A stretch of 63,621 nucleotides of DNA, the filler included, from Octopus bimaculoides (lineage: Eukaryota), in NCBI RefSeq assembly GCF_001194135.2. It is 5 parts of 4 records of this genome, joined end to end, with 100 filler letters (N's around TTAATTAATTAA, not from the genome) between each part and the next. Parts side by side here need not be neighbours in the genome. Positions count along the whole stretch, not along the records: positions 1 to 22,884 come from NC_068996.1; 4 more parts are not named here. One strand, 5' to 3'. Below, piece after piece: positions 11,421-22,884 of the stretch; position 1 is the first letter of the stretch, and every line of letters begins with the position of its first letter. A program made the translations under genes and the position numbers. Under the pieces are notes generated by a model. The model was given only the letters and a program-made list of their open reading frames with translations, did not search any database and was not told where the DNA came from.

Positions 11421-13494
11421 ACTTCGGCTCCTAGATTAGCGACTGGAGGCAACAGAAAGCCCAATAGCTTCAGAATAAACATTAACATCCTCACAAATTA
11501 CTGCTGGACTGATTAAAAATTCTTCTACCACAGTTGAAAGCTGCTTTGAAATATTCCGTAACATAAGACGCTGAACGCTGGGGAGATTACCAACGTGTCA
11601 AACAACTTTACAGCTTTGCTTTTCCTTTCACTGCATTCTAAAGACATGGCTTTGCTGTTTTATACGCTGTATTTCCAATAATACTGAACACCCAACCGAA
11701 TTGGAATGTAATTTAAAGGGAGAAAATCGATTGAAATAATTAATCAAGGGAGGTAACTGTATCAAGGCATTTAAACTTGATTATAGCGCGGATTTGGTCT
11801 TAGCTGCAATTAACAATTATAATTCGTGATTATGGGAATCCATAAGCTTAGGCACGAGTCTTCTGCTATAGAATCAGGCTAGCCAACGCTTTGTGAACCG
11901 AATACAATAGACAGAAACTCTACGCGTGTGAATGCACACACATGTTTGATCAATTGAATTATCTACACGTTTGTGATAGTGTGAACGTAGCTTACACAGA
12001 GCCCCAACACGTTCTGAAAAACATGAATACATGTGAGAGTAACAAAGAAATAAGGAAGGTGGTCGTGGGATGTGTTAGAAACAACACACAAGTCTCCCTT
12101 AAACCACACACCTTTCGTCTGAAAATATTGACAGTTTTTTTTTTTTCATCGAAAACGGCTTCTCCAATGGTTTTTAAGTGCATAGTGCAAAAGACNNNNN
12201 NNNNNNNNNNNNNNNNNNNNNNNNNNNNNNNNNNNNNNNNNNNNNNNNNNNNNNNNNNNNNNNNNNNNNNNNNNNNNNNNNNNNNNNNNNNNNNNNNNNN
12301 NNNNNNNNNNNNNNNNNNNNNNNNNNNNNNNNNNNNNNNNNNNNNNNNNNNNNNNNNNNNNNNNNNNNNNNNNNNNNNNNNNNNNNNNNNNNNNNNNNNN
12401 NNNNNNNNNNNNNNNNNNNNNNNNNNNNNNNNNNNNNNNNNNNNNNNNNNNNNNNNNNNNNNNNNNNNNNNNNNNNNNNNNNNNNNNNNNNNNNNNNNNN
12501 NNNNNNNNNNNNNNNNNNNNNNNNNNNNNNNNNNNNNNNNNNNNNNNNNNNNNNNNNNNNNNNNNNNNNNNNNNNNNNNNNNNNNNNNNNNNNNNNNNNN
12601 NNNNNNNNNNNNNNNNNNNNNNNNNNNNNNNNNNNNNNNNNNNNNNNNNNNNNNNNNNNNNNNNNNNNNNNNNNNNNNNNNNNNNNNNNNNNNNNNNNNN
12701 NNNNNNNNNNNNNNNNNNNNNNNNNNNNNNNNNNNNNNNNNNNNNNNNNNNNNNNNNNNNNNNNNNNNNNNNNNNNNNNNNNNNNNNNNNNNNNNNNNNN
12801 NNNATGTATGTATGCATGTATGTATGTATGCATGTATGTATGTGTATATGTATGTATGCATGTATGTATGTGTATGTGTGTGTATGTATGTATGTATGTA
12901 TGTATGTGTGTATGTGTGTCTATGTGTGTGTATGTATGTATATGTGTGTGTATGAATGTATGAATGTATGTGTGTATGTGTGTATATATATGTATGTATG
13001 TATGAATGTATGTATGTATGTATCTATGTGTGTATTTGTGTGTGTATGAATGAATGTATGTATGCATGTATGTATGTATGCATGTATGTATGTGTATATG
13101 TATGCATGTATGTATGTGTATATGTATGTATGTATGTATGTATGTAAGCATGTATGTATGTATGTATGCAGGTATGTGTATAAATTCAGTAAGTATTGAG
13201 AAGCAATAGAAATACTCTTAAGTGAAAATTTTTGGCAGTTTTACTGATTAAAAAGGATTCCATAATATTTTAGTCCATGTTTCCTAATATCTAAAATTAA
13301 TAATAATGAATAAAAATGTTTAAAAGGGATCACTTAAAGGGGTACTTCTTAGTATCTCATGCTTTTTAGTATGCTCAACAAGCACTTAAAAAGTAACGTT
13401 TTAAGTACTTTTTTTGGCAGCGTAAGATCAAATTTAAAAAGGAAATGAAAAAAATAAATAAATATAAAGTGTAAAATTCGATTTGACTAAAAGG

Positions 13495-14049: not shown

Positions 14050-14410
14050 CTCTATTGTATATATTTACAAAGTATTGAACATGGAGATCGATTTGGTTGA
14101 TGGAAATAAAGCCATCCAGCAGAACATGCTGAGTTCATCTCTTTCAGGTCTTCGCATTCCTCAGTTGTCGTAGCCCATGTCTCATTGCATGTAACATCAT
14201 ACAATCTACCTTTCACTTTGAGGGAGAAACCCTTATTTACTAACAGAGATATTAGCTCTCTGAACTTCTCCCAGTCTGTTCTTATTGTAGTAGCTATGTT
14301 TTCAGAACAACCTCCCCAACTACTAACTTGGTCACCTAAGTAACGGAAGCTGTGTACTACTTCTAAGGATTCCCGCTGATATTTAAGGGAGTCTATTTTT
14401 TTGTACATTC
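14050..14410 (-). mobile_element. RTE-type LINE RT fragment (same family as 56290-58990)
   Basis: LEVVHSFRYLGDQVSSWGGC...WEKFRELISLLVNKGFSLKVKGRLYD aligns with FELADSFCYLGDKISNSGGC...WKKFRELLPLLATKG...RVKGRLCD at 57.7-58.2 kb. Confidence 0.85.
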
Positions 14411-17027: not shown

Positions 17028-17455
17028 TACTCTTTACTCTTTGCTCTTTACTCTTTTATTTGTTTCAGTCATTTGACTGTGGCCATGCTGGGGCACCACC
17101 TTTAGTTGAGCAAATCAACCCCAGGACTTATTCTTTGTAAGCCTAGTACTTATTCTATCGTTCTCTTTTGCTGAACCGCTAAGTTATGGGGACGTAAACA
17201 CACCAGCATCGGTTGTCAAGCGATGTTGGGGGGACAAACACAGACACACAAACATATACACACACATACATATATATATGTATACATATATATGACGGGC
17301 TTGTTTCAGTTTCCGTCTACCAAATCCACTCACAAGGCTTTGGTCGGCCCGAGGTTATAGTAGAAGACACTTGCCCAAGGTGCCACGCAGTGGGAATGAA
17401 CCTGGAACCATGTGGTTGGTAAGCAAGCTACTTACCACACAGCCACTCCTGCACC
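17028..17455 (-). mobile_element. High-copy tRNA-derived SINE family A, full length
   Basis: Head GGTGCAGGAGTGGCTGTGTGGTAAG...GGTTCCAGGTTCATTCCCACTGCGTGGCACCTTGGGCAAGTGTCTT, internal (AT/GT) tract, and tail GCATGGCCACAGTCAAATGACTGAAACA with tandem (AAAGAGT)-like end. Confidence 0.85.
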
Positions 17456-18317
17456 TATGCACTTTCATCAGGATACAAGATTTAAAACCTATTTAGGAAT
17501 TTTTTCTTTTTTATCATAAAACAATTTAGCATATCTGATGTCATATAAGAAGTATTTTCCTCCCAAAAGAAGTCTCGCAGAATCATCCTGGGTCCTATCT
17601 TCGAAGTTGGATTTACACTACATACTTTAATGCACTATAAATCTTTCCCCTGAATATATGGATGCTGAAATTAGAGTGTGTCTAATATGCTGTGCATCTT
17701 TTGTGCTATCAAATACAATAACAATTATAATGCTAATATATTTAGAAGTGACCATGGTCGATTAACTTGTAACAGGTCACTGCTTCTCTCTCTTCCTCTT
17801 TCCCTGTCTGTCTATCTGTCTGTCTGTCTGTGTCTGTTACACACACTCCCACTCTCTCTCTTATAGAAATTGTACAATTCACAAACGATACCAGGAGAGC
17901 CTTTCTCTATGAAGGAAAATACTGTCAGTGGCCAGATTACTTTAATTCAAATTCCATTAACTTGCTTGATTCGAGGCAATGGAGCAGAAAAATAATAAAA
18001 AAAAAAGAACAAAAAGAGTGTGTTGAAGCTCTTGTAATAATTTTGAAAAGACAAAAGAGAGAAACAAAAGAAGAGAATAAGATAAAAGCATTAAAATGCT
18101 ATTAGGGAGAAACACCACATGATAAAATGGAAGTCTAATTTTTCCAGCCAAATCCCATACTTAAAAGCAACTAAATTAAGTAAATAAAATCATACAAGGA
18201 TTAGTTGGAAGTTCTATATATANNNNNNNNNNNNNNNNNNNNNNNNNNNNNNNNNNNNNNNNNNNNNNNNNNNNNNNNNNNNNNNNNNNNNNNNNNNNNN
18301 NNNNNNNNNNNNNNNNA

Positions 18318-18720
18318 GTAGAACTCATTTCTGGAAACCTCATGGCATACTCAGATTGTTGAAAAATAATATGGCCCCTAAAAGGGATCCTTATGTATAT
18401 CTAAATATCTACTACATATGTGGGAAATTCTGTTTGTGAGTGTGTTTGTGGAGTTGTTAACTAACTCCTCCTACATCGTTTTATCGATTTTGATGAAACT
18501 CGACACGTGAGTAGAACTCATTTCTGGAAACCTCATGGCATACTCAGATTGTTGAAAAATAATATGGCCCCTAAAAGGGATCCTTATGTATATCTAATAT
18601 ATTTTAGTTTAAAAACCAAAGGAAATAACCCATTCGCCCTTGAAGGGATCGGTATATATATATTTAACCAAGGGAAATAACCCATTCATTTTCCTAATTT
18701 ATTTGGTAAAAATGAAATTG
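18318..18720 (+). mobile_element. Non-autonomous Helitron/Helentron-like fragment
   Basis: ATCTACTACATATGTGGGAAATTCTGTTTGTGAGTGTGTTTG...ATCGATTTTGATGAAACTCGACAC resembles Lep1/HINE-type 5' regions; contains an about 85-nt duplication. Confidence 0.4.
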
Positions 18721-19018
18721 AGTAGGCTTATTTCTTAGTATTTGAACTGTTAGAGTTATTTTCGCAATTTTCACATACATACATACATACATGCTTACAT
18801 ACAAACATACATACATACATATATCCATACATACACACACGCATACCTACCTACCTACCTACCTACATACATACATACATACATACATACATACATGCTT
18901 ACATACAAACATACATACATACATACATATATCCATACATACACACACGCATACCTACCTACCTACCTACCTACCTACATACATACATACATACATACAT
19001 ACATACATACATACATAC

Positions 19019-19895
19019 AGTTCAGAATTGCGAGTTTTGTAACTTCAGCTCAGATTGAATTTGAACTATTTTCTCACCGTATTTCTTTGCGATTGTACTG
19101 CATTCTTCTTTCCATCTTCTGCTAATTATTTTCTTTGAATTGAGAAGCTTCTTTAATTCTACCATAGTGTAATGATTTCCATCTTCAAAACTCTGCAGTT
19201 TCAATTAAAAATCTTGTGAGTTGAAAGACATTTCCTTTTTCATAACAGCAATGCTTTTACGCAGGTTACGCTGTATCTCTTCCTGTTCATTGTTTGCTTA
19301 TAACATATTCACCTTTAGTTCGTTAATTTCCTGGATCAACTGAAATTTTATTTTTTGCCAGTCGGCTGTTGTTACTGTTCGGCGAAGACGCTTACTCCTT
19401 TAGTTTTTTCATTTTCTTTCATTAAAAGATCTATTTTCTGGTCCAAGTTTTCCCTATCACGTTCTTGCTGATGTTCAAATTTGTCAAGCTTCCTCTCAGT
19501 GTCATCTTTAGATTTTAAAGCTTCTTTTAAACACGGTGTAAGCTTTTCTTTGACTTCTTTGAGAGACTTAGTCTTCTCTACAAAGTTTTGATGGACGTTT
19601 TGTAATTCTGACTCAACATTTCTTTTATCTCCAGGACACCTTCTCATATCAATTTCTCTCTCAGAACGTTCCATTTCAAAGAAGTGGACCTTTTTATTTA
19701 GTTTTACAATCCTGACATTGAGAAGAGATTTCACATCATCTACATCTTTTCTGGTCGCTTTGCCAACATCTTCCATCAAGTCATCAACGACTTTCTGTAA
19801 ACAGATGATCTGTTCTTTTTTTGTGTAGAAACGTGTTTGGCCAAATCTTTATCTAGAATTGCATTTTCCACAATTTGCTGAACATTTTTCTTGTC
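19019..19895 (-). pseudogene. SCLT1: Intronless decayed copy of sodium channel and clathrin linker 1 (ciliary distal appendage coiled-coil protein), C-terminal half
   Basis: Reconstructed translation QIVENAILDKDLAK..QKKEQI..LMEDVGKATRKDV...EMERSERE..R..GDKRNVESEL...KSKDD...SFEDGNHYTMVELKKLL..KKIISRRWKEE..IQSELK is colinear with recalled human SCLT1 (LLEEANLQKSQA..QKEEDI..VQDATIRTKKEV...QMECAEKQ..R..KEKKAVEEEL...RSKDD...EMEDSNRNSIVELRHLL..QKAANRWKEE..LKSELS). At least 2 frameshifts and 2 in-frame TAA; no introns over about 875 nt. Confidence 0.8.
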
Positions 19896-21805
19896 TTCCA
19901 CCAGATCTGTGCAACCAAGGTTTAGGTCCTCTGCATACCTCACTTGCATCCGCCTCAACCGCAACACCTGAGCGTCATCCAAGCACTGACAAAAATCCGT
20001 GCGAACAGGCCATGTAAATACACTGATAGACCTCCACTTCCTCTGACTTCACTTCTTCTGCAGGTACGCGGGCGACACTGCTCTTGGTCCACTGCCTGGC
20101 ACAGTCCCACAATTGGCTGCCACAACCAGCACTTCATCAGCACCTGTCTCCACCAGGGTTCGTCCTACCATCACTCCAGCCTTCATCTTGCACTCTCTCT
20201 GTCGGCTCCACCATCCCAAGGCAGCCATCAAATGATCCATCCATACTACACTGGAGCAGTAATTCCGATCTTGCTGGGATCATTGTCGTCCGTAATGTTC
20301 TTACCTCACCGCCAGCTGTGGTCCGCTTTACCACCTTAACAGGGACTGATCTTCCTTGCACCCAAAGCTTCATGGAGCTTCTTTGGAATATTCGACTGGC
20401 TGTTGCTCCTTAACACCAGCCCCTTCTAGTTTTCCGACTCTCCTTTAACTTCTGTTACCTTTTTACTCTTCTTTCTTACAGGACAGTCAAAACTCAGATG
20501 TTCCTTTCACCGCATGTCCAGCAATCTCTCCCAGATGTGAACTTTCTACTATCATCCAGCTTTTGTTCTCTTTTCAAGCTGTAACAATCTTACTTCCTGT
20601 GTCCTGCTTTCCAACAGTGCCAGCAACTTCTTCCAACCATCTCTTGTTCTTTCTTCTCCAAATATCCCTCTCTTTTATACCCTGACTTTTCGCAATACCA
20701 ACAACTTTCATTAAGTTTTCCTGCTTCACGTACTTACCCCATACTTGCTTTGGATCCGGAACTGTAGTCCACCTGGAAACTTTTTATGCTAGACCTTACA
20801 TATGATTTAAATTCTAGAACTCTAGACAGTGCCTCTTGCATGATATTCAGTTGTGCCCAGAGCGTCGATAAACTGCTCTTTCAGAAGAAGAGTGAAGAGG
20901 TTGGATGTTGTCTTATGTGCCACGCTTTCCAGGTCCTGGGCAATCTATTGTAGTGACTCCCCCCAAGCCCTTACACAACTCCGAATTCGTGCCCTGTACA
21001 CTTCACTCTGGTACATAGTGCCATATCTTCTTTGTAACATTTCAACTAATGAAGAGTAACGGCTTCTGTCCTCCACTGACAACTGGCTCAACACTTTTAC
21101 TGTAGCACCCTTTAGACTAGCAGCATGCTGAACTGCTCTTTGCCTACTGTTCCAACCATTCTGGTCAACCTTTATCTCAAACAGGACACAGTAGGCTTCC
21201 CATGACACTTTTCCGTCAAATTCTTGTGGCTTCTTCTTAATAGAAATTCTACTGTTGCCTTGCACTTCGCTGGATCTGGGCCTAAATATTGGAGCCTCAT
21301 GATTCCGTCCAGGACTCAAAACTGCCCCTTGACCACCAGCAGGCACACCCGCTTCTGAAAGAGCACCTCTGGACATTTGGCCATTTTCAACATTCAATAC
21401 ATGTCGTCCACCATTTTCGCACACTCTCTGCAAATCAGCCTGAGGATCAGCAGCACAAAACTGTTCCACGGCTTCCATTCTCTCATTAAGCATATTCATA
21501 TACATGTTGCTAACACCATATAATATCATCACTCACCTCACATCTGTACTGCTGTAATTCTTCACAAAGCTTTTTCTTGAACTGCTGTTGACCTTTCTCC
21601 ATTCTTCTTATGAATGTGTCTAGCTGTCCCCGAAGACATGTGTGCTGCGCTTTCTGCTCTTCGTTAAACTCAGTCACTTTATTACTTTGGTTTTGCAATA
21701 TTTTCACGATTGCAACCAGAGACACTTGTTCCTTCCCTGCCCTGCCTCCTTGTGCGCACTCCTTCCAATTCAATAACGAATAATTGGCTCGCTGCAGCAA
21801 TAAAA
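19896..21805 (-). mobile_element. Ty3/Gypsy internal region: gag plus post-protease pol spacer, decayed
   Basis: KKPQEFDGKVSWEAY..FE...NGWN...ASLKGA..VL...RYGT..QSEVYRARIR...GESL; LLKEQFIDAL; frameshifted CWTCGE knuckle near 20500; spacer TTMIPARSE...VGRTLV ending LGCTDLVE. Confidence 0.85.
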
Positions 21806-21823
21806 ATCTCACTTCTGACACCA
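21806..21823 (-). other. Primer-binding site complementary to tRNA-Leu 3' end
   Basis: TGGTGTCAGAAGTGAGAT, a 17/18 match to the canonical TGGTGTCAGAAGTGGGAT, 4 nt after the LTR end. Confidence 0.85.
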
Positions 21824-21827
21824 AAAA

Positions 21828-22287
21828 CGTTGTGAAATGCGGCCTCCTGACGCCAACACGGCTCCAACAGTCTAGCCAGTAGCTAAGAAACTGCAGGCTA
21901 GCCCAGTAAGCCAATTTGCTTAGAGTGGAAGAAGTTGTCGTACCTGATTGAATGTCTTGTGTAATATGCTTCTACGTCGCTCGGATTCGCTTCGACTGGT
22001 CACATCGCAGCTTCGTATCCAACTTGACACCGACAGTCTTCGTATCCAACTTGACACTGACTGTTTACGTTGCCATCTTCACACTTTCTTCGTAGCCAAC
22101 TTACGCTATCTTCTTCCTGTTTGTTTACGTTGCCATCTTCACACTCCGCGTTCTTTTCGTCACGGACTTCACACGCCGAATTCTTTACATCAACAACTTC
22201 ACACCACTCCGATTTTTCTTTTTCTTTTTACCTCACCAACTGACACTGCGCGTTCCTTTACCAGTTCAAATTGTCCACCTCACAACA
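21828..22287 (-). mobile_element. 5' LTR of the Gypsy element (460 bp)
   Basis: Minus strand starts TGTTGTGA and ends TCACAACG (terminal inverted repeat with last base mutated), directly followed by the PBS; internal direct repeats at 22011-22030 and 22038-22057. Confidence 0.75.
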
Positions 22288-22504
22288 AAGACGAACAAAA
22301 CATGAATTTTCCTGTTTGGAGTATTATATCTTGATTCAAATATCTTTGCTGCTACGTCTGTGTGAGTTCTTTTACGTCTGTTATTGTGAGACATTTTTGT
22401 AACTGTTTGTTTAACAGTTGTTTTCGCCCTACGGGGCAGGAAAATACCATTCATTTGTCTTTGCGACAAGAATTTTTGTTTGTTATTTTTGTCTTTTTGA
22501 CAAA

Positions 22505-22884
22505 ATGGCGACAGCCGAAAGCAACGCTCCCATTCAGGGAGAAAATATGCCAAAGCAAAGTTTTTCTCAGGCTGTAGGTGGAAGCACCATTGAATTGAAA
22601 ATTGCAAAAGAGAGTCTGTACGCGTTCAGGAAGTACATACAAAAGGTGGATGGTGAAACCAAATTGATTCCACCACCCGAGACTGTCAATGCCCGAAAGG
22701 AAAAGATAGTAGTATACAAGGTATACAATATAAAAGAAAAAAAGATTACTGAGGTTCGTAACGAACTGGTCGAGAGGTGCCTGGCGCCAATATGGCCAAA
22801 GGTCCGCCACGTCAATCGCGGAGTACGAAGTGCAACGGTTGAGGTGCACTTCGACTCGGCTGAAGTGGCGAGGGAGGTCTCGAC
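22505..22884 (+). mobile_element. L1/Tx1-like ORF1 N-terminus, open up to a contig break
   Basis: MATAESN...KQSFSQAV...KIVVYKVYNIKEKKI...LVERCLAPI...RGVRSATVEVHF is homologous to the 2634-2900 ORF (TIVYKVYAVEGKKI...IIEKALSAV...RGNKFGTVVVQY). Confidence 0.7.

What the first reader, a model, noticed from the sequence alone, without database searches (positions are those of the whole stretch)
19019..22287. Gypsy LTR element whose RT-integrase is replaced, in frame, by a host SCLT1 cDNA
Seen on the minus strand, in order: 460-bp LTR (TGTTGTGA...TCACAACG), tRNA-Leu PBS, gag, pol spacer. Exactly where RT should start, the motif LGCTDLVE (normally followed by H-x-I) continues without a stop into DKKNVQQIVENAILDKDLAK (junction about 19896-19901, GTGGAA). 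About 875 intron-free nt of SCLT1-like coiled coil follow. Established: LTR retrotransposons can capture mRNA by template switching during reverse transcription, giving LTR-flanked retrocopies, and SCLT1 is a multi-exon ciliary distal-appendage gene in vertebrates. Inference: this is an LTR-mediated chimeric retrocopy, now decayed (frameshifts, 2 TAA). No 3' LTR is visible because a (CATA)n tract cuts the copy at 19019.
Basis: partly seen in the sequence, partly recalled or inferred. Interest (0 to 1): 0.85.

Follow-up and report, generated by a model that had tools for sequence, protein, structure and literature searches.

The report
Octopus Gypsy element carrying spliced SCLT1
A decayed octopus Gypsy-type retrotransposon has had its reverse transcriptase and integrase replaced by an intron-free piece of the host ciliary gene SCLT1, and two other copies with the same fusion point at other octopus loci show that the hybrid spread as a parasite of its parent element: a clean example of a known mechanism.

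Summary

- **Element layout.** On the minus strand, an LTR remnant, a PBS, gag, CCHC knuckles and the pol spacer run to the motif LGCTDLVE. Intact relatives continue there with H-x-I-(D/H)-TGD, the start of RT.
- **Captured gene.** From that point, 19907-19018 matches eight consecutive exons of octopod SCLT1 (O. sinensis residues 294-590 of 691). It is 88.9% identical in nucleotides.
- **Introns removed.** All seven GT-AG introns, about 15 kb in O. sinensis, are precisely absent.
- **Junction.** Gypsy and SCLT1 homology overlap by 12 nt: GATCTGGTGGAA in the window against GATATGGTGGAA in the parent. This is the microsimilarity expected of an RT template switch.
- **Not a one-off.** Two further decayed copies share the same junction, one in O. 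vulgaris and one in O. bimaculoides, at non-syntenic loci. The O. vulgaris copy joins SCLT1 directly to the Gypsy 3' end, polypurine tract and LTR.

This is therefore a non-autonomous, Bs1-like family that was mobilised after a single capture.

- The true LTR terminus lies outside the proposed TGTTGTGA.
- The protease is deleted in this copy.
- There are three TAA stops and four frameshifting indels.

It is a new member of a known kind, of moderate interest.

The parts
21828..22304 (-). 5' LTR remnant with 27-30-nt tandem repeats in U3. The right end is ...CACAACG.
   Evidence: Homologous to the LTR of copy L004 at 8498-8846, in the same position before the PBS and gag. The LTR-start sequence follows the polypurine tract in L001 and L006. 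Upstream of about 22304 similarity is not above shuffles.
21806..21823 (-). Primer-binding-site-like TGGTGTCAGAAGTGAGAT, 4 nt downstream of the LTR end.
   Evidence: Read directly from the sequence. A decayed counterpart, TGATATCAGAAGTAGGAT, is in L004. Complementarity to the 3' end of eukaryotic tRNA-Leu(CAA) is from memory and was not tested here; no tRNA gene was found in any fetched locus.
20945..21532 (-). gag open reading frame (capsid-like core at 21478-20984), followed by a decayed continuation.
   Evidence: BLASTP to the family gag-PR protein P0040 gives 45% identity and E 7e-41. Supported by tblastn. Pfam Retrotrans_gag is only weak, E 0.17.
20480..20703 (-). Three degenerate CCHC zinc knuckles of gag (CWYC..., CWHC...H, CWTC...), interrupted by stops.
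   Evidence: Three-frame translation. Homologous stretch in L001 and L004.
20373..20377 (-). Deletion point: about 307 bp encoding the aspartic protease core is missing from this copy.
   Evidence: The window HSPs abut at 20373-20377, while L001 (9343-9650) and L004 (9504-9811) keep the protease-coding stretch. Relatives there carry PF13650 and PF13975.
19908..20372 (-). Protease C-terminal region and pol spacer, ending in ...RYAEDLNLGCT. An 18-nt deletion (DVFSAG) lies just before the junction.
   Evidence: tblastn of RT-bearing relatives P0055, P0053 and P0045 aligns to 20240-19896 and stops there. Protein alignment.
19896..19907 (-). Fusion point: GATCTGGTGGAA (D-L-V-E). These 12 nt belong both to the Gypsy RT-start motif TD(L/M)VE-H and to SCLT1 D-M-V-E-D (parent GATATGGTGGAA, 11 of 12 identical).
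   Evidence: DNA alignment of three copies and two parent genes. Gypsy homology ends at 19896 and SCLT1 homology starts at 19907. Protein alignment.
19018..19895 (-). Spliced SCLT1 fragment covering eight consecutive exons, residues 294-590 of the 691-residue O. sinensis protein. Exon joins lie at about 19842/1, 19743-1, 19672/1, 19596/5, 19448-6, 19254-2 and 19117/6. It is decayed by four indels and three TAA stops.
   Evidence: blastn to the O. sinensis gene L005 at 27921-43933 and to the Argonauta gene L002 gives abutting HSPs. GT-AG introns are verified against the proteins. Identity is 88.9% over 876 nt.
18773..19019 (.). (ACAT/TATG)n microsatellite that truncates the copy. The rest of SCLT1, the 3' Gypsy end, the polypurine tract and the 3' LTR are missing.
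   Evidence: TRF finds period 4 with 61.8 copies. SCLT1 homology ends at 19018. No other LTR or SCLT1 piece is in the window.

Best explanation
The region is one decayed, 3'-truncated copy of a non-autonomous Ty3/Gypsy-derived LTR element.

**Capture (inferred).** During reverse transcription of an autonomous Gypsy element in an ancestor of Octopus, after the split from Argonauta, reverse transcriptase left the Gypsy RNA for a co-packaged spliced SCLT1 mRNA. It then returned to the Gypsy RNA at a 12-nt stretch that both templates share, GAT(C/A)TGGTGGAA, which encodes D-(L/M)-V-E. The product kept the 5' LTR, PBS, gag, protease and spacer, and, as the O. vulgaris copy shows, the last ~25 nt of the internal region, the polypurine tract and the 3' LTR. 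In place of RT, RNase H and integrase it carried about 0.9 kb or more of SCLT1 coding sequence.

**Spread (inferred).** Having all the cis signals but no enzymes, the chimera was copied to new loci by proteins supplied in trans by autonomous relatives. This gave at least three dispersed copies with an identical 5' junction.

**Decay.** All copies then decayed neutrally.

**Shown here:** the SCLT1 identity, intron loss, exact junction position, microsimilarity, shared junction at non-syntenic loci, and the 3' Gypsy end after SCLT1 in one copy.

**Inferred:** that the joins were made by RT template switching rather than DNA recombination, and that dispersal was by retrotransposition.
For: - **SCLT1 identity.**
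- **Spliced origin.** Eight exons are contiguous in the window, with seven GT-AG introns (about 15.1 kb in O. sinensis) removed at conserved positions.
- **Junction position.** Intact relatives read ...DLDLGCTD(L/M)VE-H-x-I-(D/H)-TGD..PIK and carry RVT_1 from there.
- **Overlap of homologies.** Gypsy homology ends at 19896 and SCLT1 homology begins at 19907. 11 of these 12 nt are identical between chimera and parent.
- **Loss of enzymes.** No RT, RNase H or integrase remains anywhere in the window.
- **Other copies.** The same junction occurs in L001 (O. vulgaris OX597830.1) and L004 (O. bimaculoides CM046611.1). There is no flank homology or synteny between the loci.
- **Single origin.** The copies share five derived substitutions against 28-48 private ones. 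Copy-to-copy K2P is 0.20-0.25, against 0.14-0.18 to the parent.
- **3' side.** In L001, SCLT1 joins the Gypsy 3' terminal sequence, polypurine tract AGGGAGGGG and LTR start at a 4-nt TGCT overlap. The same Gypsy 3' end is seen in a non-chimeric relative, L006.
- **Composition.** GC content steps down at the junction.
- **No constraint.** Differences by codon position are 28/22/47, against 31/13/137 between the true orthologues. The copy also has indels and stops.
- **Precedent.** The mechanism and its features (partial mRNA, replaced internal ORFs, microsimilarity with a median of 6 bp, secondary retroposition, Bs1 copies sharing switch points) are described in PMC5131818.
Against: - No copy examined is complete with two LTRs and target-site duplications, so retrotransposition of the chimera is inferred and not shown.
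- The original 3' switch point is unknown. The window carries two more exons than L001 and L004 and is then cut by a microsatellite. The L001 3' junction may therefore be a secondary deletion.
- The nucleotide sequence of the autonomous progenitor at the switch site is inferred from protein conservation, not read directly.
- Only three copies were seen, found through annotated proteins. Copy number in any one genome is unknown, and the species of the window is not known.
Confidence: 0.85

Rival explanations
1. The join was made at the DNA level. A LINE-made processed SCLT1 pseudogene and a Gypsy copy would have been fused by microhomology-mediated end joining or deletion. The fusion then spread, by retrotransposition or by duplication.
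For: Microhomology of 4-12 nt is also typical of DNA end joining. All copies carry many later deletions, which shows that DNA-level rearrangement is common here.
Against: - Both ends of the SCLT1 insert are internal to the coding sequence.
- No poly(A) tail or 3' UTR is seen.
- The insert has the same orientation as the element and exactly replaces the internal ORFs between the RT start and about 25 nt before the polypurine tract.
- This is the pattern documented for RT template switching.
- The chimera retains exactly the cis elements needed for mobilisation.
Confidence: 0.08
2. The three copies are not transposed. They would be relics of segmental duplication of one chimeric locus, or orthologues whose flanks have been scrambled.
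For: - No copy has both LTRs or a target-site duplication.
- The flanks available are short, gapped and repeat-rich.
- The window's species is unknown.
Against: - No flank similarity exists apart from an abundant interspersed repeat.
- L004 sits inside an SLC22 transporter cluster that is absent from L001 and the window.
- Homology ends at the element's own boundaries: LTR and PBS on the left, polypurine tract and LTR on the right.
Confidence: 0.05
3. It is not a retrocopy at all. It would be either part of the genuine SCLT1 gene with a Gypsy insertion, an assembly chimera, or a coiled coil native to the transposon.
For: The window comes from a gapped assembly with five N runs. Pfam alone gave only a weak sub-threshold coiled-coil hit (CCCAP, E 0.004).
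Against: - The true gene in O. sinensis spans 53.7 kb, with introns at all seven positions.
- The window piece has stops and frameshifts.
- The same junction is present in two independent assemblies of two other species.
- Exon-by-exon nucleotide identity of 83-96% to a gene conserved across Metazoa fixes the direction as host to element.
Confidence: 0.02

Closest known systems
LTR-mediated retrocopies of metazoans (Tan et al. 2016, Genome Res, PMC5131818)
   Same: - An internal partial, intron-less host cDNA replaces part of the internal ORFs of an LTR retrotransposon.
- It has the same orientation as the element.
- There is microsimilarity at the switch point: 12 nt here, and 4 nt at the L001 3' junction, against a median of 6 bp in Drosophila.
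- There is no poly(A) tail.
- The chimera can behave as a pseudo-LTR retrotransposon.
   Different: - The host is a cephalopod. A library search for octopus or cephalopod retrocopies and LTR retrotransposons turned up no such case.
- The event is old (K2P about 0.12-0.18 to the parent) and all copies are decayed, whereas the described cases are mostly young or polymorphic.
- The 3' junction of the original event is not recoverable from the window.
Bs1 of maize (Elrouby and Bureau 2001, 2010, as summarised in PMC5131818)
   Same: A non-autonomous LTR element carries transduced host exon sequence. It is present in several copies that all share the same switch points, which implies one capture followed by secondary retroposition.
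   Different: - Bs1 combines three host genes and is reported as expressed.
- Here there is one host gene, in an animal.
- No evidence of expression or coding capacity was obtained.
Acutely transforming retroviruses (gag-onc fusions needing a helper virus)
   Same: Replication genes are replaced by a spliced host cDNA fused in frame to gag-pol sequence. The result is replication-defective and depends on proteins supplied in trans.
   Different: - No sign that the captured fragment confers any activity.
- It is an internal coiled-coil piece of a centriole distal-appendage protein.
- The element is an endogenous Ty3/Gypsy element with no env.
LINE-mediated processed pseudogenes
   Same: An intron-less copy of a host mRNA, decayed by frameshifts and stops.
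   Different: - No poly(A) tail and no 3' UTR.
- Both ends are internal to the coding sequence.
- It is embedded between Gypsy 5' and 3' parts instead of LINE-type target-site duplications.

Membership tests
LTR-mediated chimeric retrocopy / pseudo-LTR retrotransposon with captured host cDNA | The internal host-derived sequence lacks the parent gene's introns | tested here: met
   Eight exons are contiguous. Seven GT-AG introns present in the O. sinensis and Argonauta genes are absent.
LTR-mediated chimeric retrocopy / pseudo-LTR retrotransposon with captured host cDNA | The host sequence replaces part of the element's internal ORFs instead of interrupting a continuous element | tested here: met
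   Pol homology stops at 19896, exactly at the RT start. No RT, RNase H or integrase is present anywhere in the window.
LTR-mediated chimeric retrocopy / pseudo-LTR retrotransposon with captured host cDNA | Retrotransposon sequence on both sides of the retrocopy | tested here: inconclusive
   The 5' side is present in the window. The 3' side is lost behind the microsatellite. In the paralogous copy L001, SCLT1 is followed by the Gypsy 3' end, polypurine tract and LTR start.
LTR-mediated chimeric retrocopy / pseudo-LTR retrotransposon with captured host cDNA | Microsimilarity between mRNA and element at the switch points | tested here: met
   There is a 12-nt overlap at 19907-19896, 11 of 12 identical to the parent. 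The L001 3' junction has a 4-nt TGCT overlap. The progenitor's nucleotides are inferred from protein conservation.
LTR-mediated chimeric retrocopy / pseudo-LTR retrotransposon with captured host cDNA | Secondary mobilisation: several copies with the same switch point at different loci | tested here: met
   Three copies (window, L001, L004) share the junction and have no flank homology. Target-site duplications and intact LTR pairs were not available.
Ty3/Gypsy LTR retrotransposon (the carrier) | LTR, tRNA-type PBS, and gag with CCHC knuckles | tested here: met
   The tRNA-Leu assignment of the PBS rests on memory only.
Ty3/Gypsy LTR retrotransposon (the carrier) | Pol domain order PR-RT-RH-IN with Gypsy-type RT and RNase H | tested here: inconclusive
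   These domains are absent from the window itself. Relatives that share the spacer carry PF13650/PF13975, then PF00078, PF17917 and PF17919. In L006, RT pieces are followed by an integrase-like H..GH motif. No phylogeny of RT was made.
Functional SCLT1 gene or expressed SCLT1 retrogene | Intact open reading frame under purifying selection | tested here: not met
   Four frameshifting indels and three TAA stops. Differences by codon position are 28/22/47, against 31/13/137 for the true orthologues. Only residues 294-590 of 691 are present.
LINE-mediated processed pseudogene | A 3' poly(A) tail, the mRNA 3' end included, and flanking target-site duplications | tested here: not met
   The fragment ends inside the coding sequence in all three copies with no poly(A). 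In the window the 3' end is cut by a microsatellite, so that copy alone is uninformative.

The most novel reading that the evidence does not exclude
The chimera may be more than dead cargo, in one of two ways.

1. The in-frame Gag-PR-spacer-SCLT1 fusion was briefly functional. A centriole or distal-appendage-targeting coiled coil could have helped the element or interfered with the host.
2. The family now supplies LTR-driven first exons to host genes. This is suggested by the O. bimaculoides gene model in which a copy forms exon 1 of an SLC22 'organic anion transporter 3' transcript.
Probability: 0.08. Interest if true: 0.6.

Novelty: new member of a known kind. Interest (0 to 1): 0.42.

Why it matters
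It is a well-resolved animal example, outside insects and vertebrates, of LTR-retrotransposon-mediated capture of a host mRNA. Both the switch-point microsimilarity and later amplification of the chimera are visible. That pattern has so far been best documented for maize Bs1 and young Drosophila retrocopies.

It shows that Gypsy elements were a route of RNA-based gene-fragment duplication in octopods. It also gives a diagnostic junction sequence with which the family can be counted and dated across cephalopod genomes.

In practical terms, it warns annotators that SCLT1-like coiled-coil ORFs in Octopus, such as CAI9734879.1 and the N-terminus of an 'organic anion transporter 3' model, are transposon cargo and not genes.

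Tried and rejected
- **Word-indexed protein search** with the repaired 290-residue coiled coil found nothing. PDB sequence search also found nothing.
- **Pfam** gave only a sub-threshold CCCAP/SDCCAG8 coiled-coil hit. I briefly considered SDCCAG8 as an alternative parent and dropped it once the exhaustive HMMER search returned SCLT1 orthologues.
- **Second LTR or further SCLT1, RT or IN pieces in the window:** none found.
- **tRNA genes to test the PBS:** none in the window or in five loci.
- **Exact look-up of a window ORF** to identify the source record: not on record. The P0041 locus was also not on record.
- **Extending the window's LTR** to the true terminus seen in the paralogues: similarity upstream of about 22304 is no better than shuffled sequence.
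- **Orthology of the three copies:** rejected for lack of flank similarity or synteny.
- **Pfam on neighbouring ORFs** (2023-2529, 10384-10710, 14052-14408, 22418-22884) gave nothing usable.
Full report
**1. What is in the sequence**

Read on the minus strand, the region contains, in order:
- An LTR-like stretch with internal 27-30-nt tandem repeats, ending ...CACAACG at 21828.
- Four T residues, then TGGTGTCAGAAGTGAGAT (21823-21806), a PBS-like site.
- A 195-codon gag ORF (21532-20945).
- Three degenerate CCHC knuckles (about 20703-20480).
- A spacer ending in ...RYAEDLNLGCTDLVE.

The same frame then continues without a stop into DKKNVQQIVENAILDKDLAK (ORF 19982-19776).

Downstream lies a lysine- and glutamate-rich decayed reading frame that shifts through three frames. 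It runs to 19018, where a (TATG)n microsatellite (18773-19019) begins.

GC content falls from about 0.46-0.54 to about 0.33-0.37 at about 19900. This fits two sequences of different origin.

The LTR has no second copy in the window.

**2. The coiled coil is SCLT1**

Three early searches were uninformative:
- Pfam gave only a sub-threshold coiled-coil match (CCCAP, E 0.004).
- The word-indexed protein search found nothing.
- The PDB search found nothing.

The exhaustive HMMER search of representatives returned 25 hits:
- The best is a 626-residue protein of the octopod Argonauta hians, 72% identical over 285 residues, E 6e-108.
- Next come 650-730-residue proteins that their sources name sodium channel and clathrin linker 1 (-like). 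They come from a nemertean, a hemichordate, Nematostella, amphioxus, a gastropod and a priapulid.

Searching with the full Argonauta protein found two further groups:
- The O. sinensis orthologue, P0033, 691 residues, mis-named 'M protein, serotype 5'.
- Mammalian SCLT1, at E 1e-32 to 1e-44 over 83-93% of the length.

The window fragment corresponds to residues 294-590 of P0033.

**3. It is a spliced copy**

I fetched the parent genes: Argonauta at 18.8 kb (L002) and O. sinensis at 53.7 kb (L005).

Window 19907-19018 aligns at 83-96% nucleotide identity to eight consecutive O. sinensis exons lying between L005 27921 and 43933. The eight alignments abut one another in the window to within 0-2 nt. 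The Argonauta gene gives the same picture for seven of the eight exons (the eighth is covered by the blastx alignment there).

All seven intervening introns have GT-AG borders. They sit at the same protein positions in both species and total about 15.1 kb in O. sinensis.

The copy is dead:
- Indels at 19818 (-1), 19409 (+1), 19349 (+1) and 19044 (-2).
- TAA stops in the parental frame at 19394-19392, 19300-19298 and 19207-19205.
- Differences from the parent spread over codon positions as 28/22/47. Between the two functional orthologues the figures are 31/13/137.

**4. The junction is exactly at the start of RT and coincides with microsimilarity**

A search with a partial protease-spacer consensus found relatives that carry PF13650/PF13975 protease domains, then PF00078 and PF17917/PF17919.

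The RT-bearing relatives (P0044, P0045, P0055, P0057) read ...(Y/F)AD(V/I)FS..D.DLG(C/R)T.(L/M)V(E/K)-H-x-I-(D/H)-TGD..P(I/V)K....

By tblastn, these proteins align to the window only as far as 19896. No RT, RNase H or integrase remnant exists elsewhere in the window.

SCLT1 homology starts at 19907. The overlapping 12 nt read GATCTGGTGGAA in the chimera and GATATGGTGGAA in the O. sinensis exon, where the protein is ...QMQDMVEDRKNAQQ....

Both templates thus encoded D-(L/M)-V-E in the same codon phase at the crossover. This explains the in-frame fusion without invoking selection.

**5. It is a family, not a single locus**

Two database proteins turned out to be translations of other copies.

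*CAI9734879.1 of O. vulgaris (P0008).* It reads ...LDDAQVLRLRQLQERYADVFSAGDLDLRCTDLVE-GRENAQQIMGNAILDKDL.... Its locus, L001 (OX597830.1), has these features:
- It aligns to window 20857-19244 at about 76-77% identity, straight across the junction.
- It retains the protease stretch that the window has lost at 20373.
- It contains exons a-f and 8 nt of exon g.

*'Organic anion transporter 3' of O. bimaculoides (P0035).* Its N-terminus comes from a third copy, L004 (CM046611.1). This copy has the LTR, a decayed PBS, gag, protease, a spacer with a 244-bp deletion, and SCLT1 exons a-f.

The three loci share no flanks apart from an abundant interspersed repeat, and no synteny.

Over the shared SCLT1 part:

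| Comparison | K2P distance |
|---|---|
| Copy to copy | 0.20-0.25 |
| Copy to O. sinensis parent | 0.14-0.18 |
| Copy to Argonauta parent | 0.35-0.40 |

The copies share five derived substitutions, against 28-48 private ones each.

This fits one capture in the Octopus lineage after its split from Argonauta. A short shared stem was followed by dispersal and then long independent neutral decay.

**6. The 3' side**

In L001 the SCLT1 sequence ...GGATTGCT is followed by TTTGTCGGGTCGAC-AAAGTCT, then AGGGAGGGG, then TAGTGTTACG....

The same string occurs in L006, a non-chimeric, internally deleted relative in O. vulgaris. There it lies downstream of RT and integrase remnants, as ...GTGTGCTTTTGTCGGGACGACGAAAAGCCTAGGGAGGGGGTAGTGTTACGG. 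It is therefore the element's 3' terminal internal sequence, polypurine tract and LTR start.

The sequence after the tract matches the 5' LTR of L004. Further in, it matches the window's LTR.

The L001 junction has a 4-nt TGCT overlap.

The window carries two more exons (g and h) than L001. Either the L001 junction is a secondary RT-mediated deletion, or the window represents the original, longer insert. The original 3' switch point cannot be recovered from these three copies.

**7. Correction of the LTR boundary**

The polypurine-tract-adjacent LTR start in L001, L006 and L004 lies about 78 nt upstream of the conserved TGTGAGGTGGAC motif.

In the window, BLAST similarity reaches only 22300. 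Further upstream it is no better than shuffled sequence.

The window's LTR is 5'-truncated or heavily diverged, and the remnant is about 22304-21828.

**8. Mechanism and comparison**

The anatomy matches, feature for feature, the template-switch model of LTR-mediated retroposition (PMC5131818):
- A partial mRNA.
- Replacement of internal ORFs.
- Microsimilarity at the fusion points.
- No poly(A) tail.
- The chimera acting as a pseudo-LTR element in further rounds.

Maize Bs1 is the precedent for several copies sharing the same switch points.

A search of the paper library for octopus or cephalopod retrocopies and LTR retrotransposons turned up no such case, and a 2026 O. vulgaris repeat-annotation paper does not mention SCLT1, gene capture or chimeras.

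I rate it a new member of a known kind. RT template switching, as opposed to DNA end joining, and trans-mobilisation remain inferences. No complete copy with target-site duplications was available.

**9. Limits**

- Only loci reachable through annotated proteins could be fetched, so copy number is a lower bound.
- The source species of the window is unknown. Its gap structure resembles the O. bimaculoides assembly, but this was not tested.
- The tRNA-Leu assignment of the PBS rests on my memory of the eukaryotic tRNA-Leu(CAA) 3' end and was not tested.

Noticed in passing
L004:10001-10476 (O. bimaculoides CM046611.1): One chimeric copy is annotated as exon 1 of an 'organic anion transporter 3' (SLC22) gene model. 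It contributes 159 codons, made of Gypsy spacer plus SCLT1 fragment. A GT donor lies at 10476 and the next exon is 17 kb downstream. This is either an LTR-driven chimeric transcript or an annotation artefact.
   Followed up: partly
L001:10001-10435 (O. vulgaris OX597830.1): The 144-residue 'hypothetical predicted protein' CAI9734879.1 is simply the Gypsy-SCLT1 junction ORF of a decayed copy. It is a mis-annotation.
   Followed up: yes
P0033 (O. sinensis, gene locus L005): The true O. sinensis SCLT1 orthologue is named 'M protein, serotype 5' in its source record. The Argonauta orthologue is named only 'uncharacterized protein LOC115218488'.
   Followed up: partly
proteins P0046, P0048, P0053-P0055, P0058-P0063: The closest intact relatives of this octopus Gypsy protease-spacer-RT region, at 49-66% identity, are predicted proteins of decapod crustaceans (Petrolisthes cinctipes, Portunus trituberculatus). 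This raises the possibility of horizontal transfer or of an old widely shared lineage.
   Followed up: no
window 22418-22884 (+ strand): An ORF of more than 155 codons (MATAESNAPIQGENMPKQSF...) runs off the edge of the piece, directly upstream of the LTR remnant and on the opposite strand. It has no Pfam match and is probably another repeat's ORF.
   Followed up: partly
window 17034-17451: A roughly 420-bp interspersed repeat has many copies in the fetched octopus loci, at 70-90% identity. About 25 matches fall in the 55-kb SCLT1 gene locus alone. It is SINE-like.
   Followed up: partly
window 10384-10710 (-), 14052-14408 (-), 2023-2529 (-): Other transposon-looking ORF fragments are present. 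By eye they are a mariner-like transposase N-terminus, an RT-like fragment and a CCHC-containing ORF. Pfam returned nothing significant for them.
   Followed up: partly
window 5266-5740 (+): 18-nt and 36-nt tandem repeats lie inside a 338-codon arginine/lysine/serine-rich ORF (4745-5761). Their nature is unknown.
   Followed up: no
window 18317-18404 and 18510-18597: A perfect 88-nt direct duplication lies next to the assembly gap at 18223-18316. It is likely a gap-edge assembly artefact.
   Followed up: no
window 11037-11417, 12804-13177, 18773-19019: Three long (ACAT/ATGT)n microsatellite blocks occur in alternating orientation within 8 kb. The last one truncates the element.
   Followed up: no
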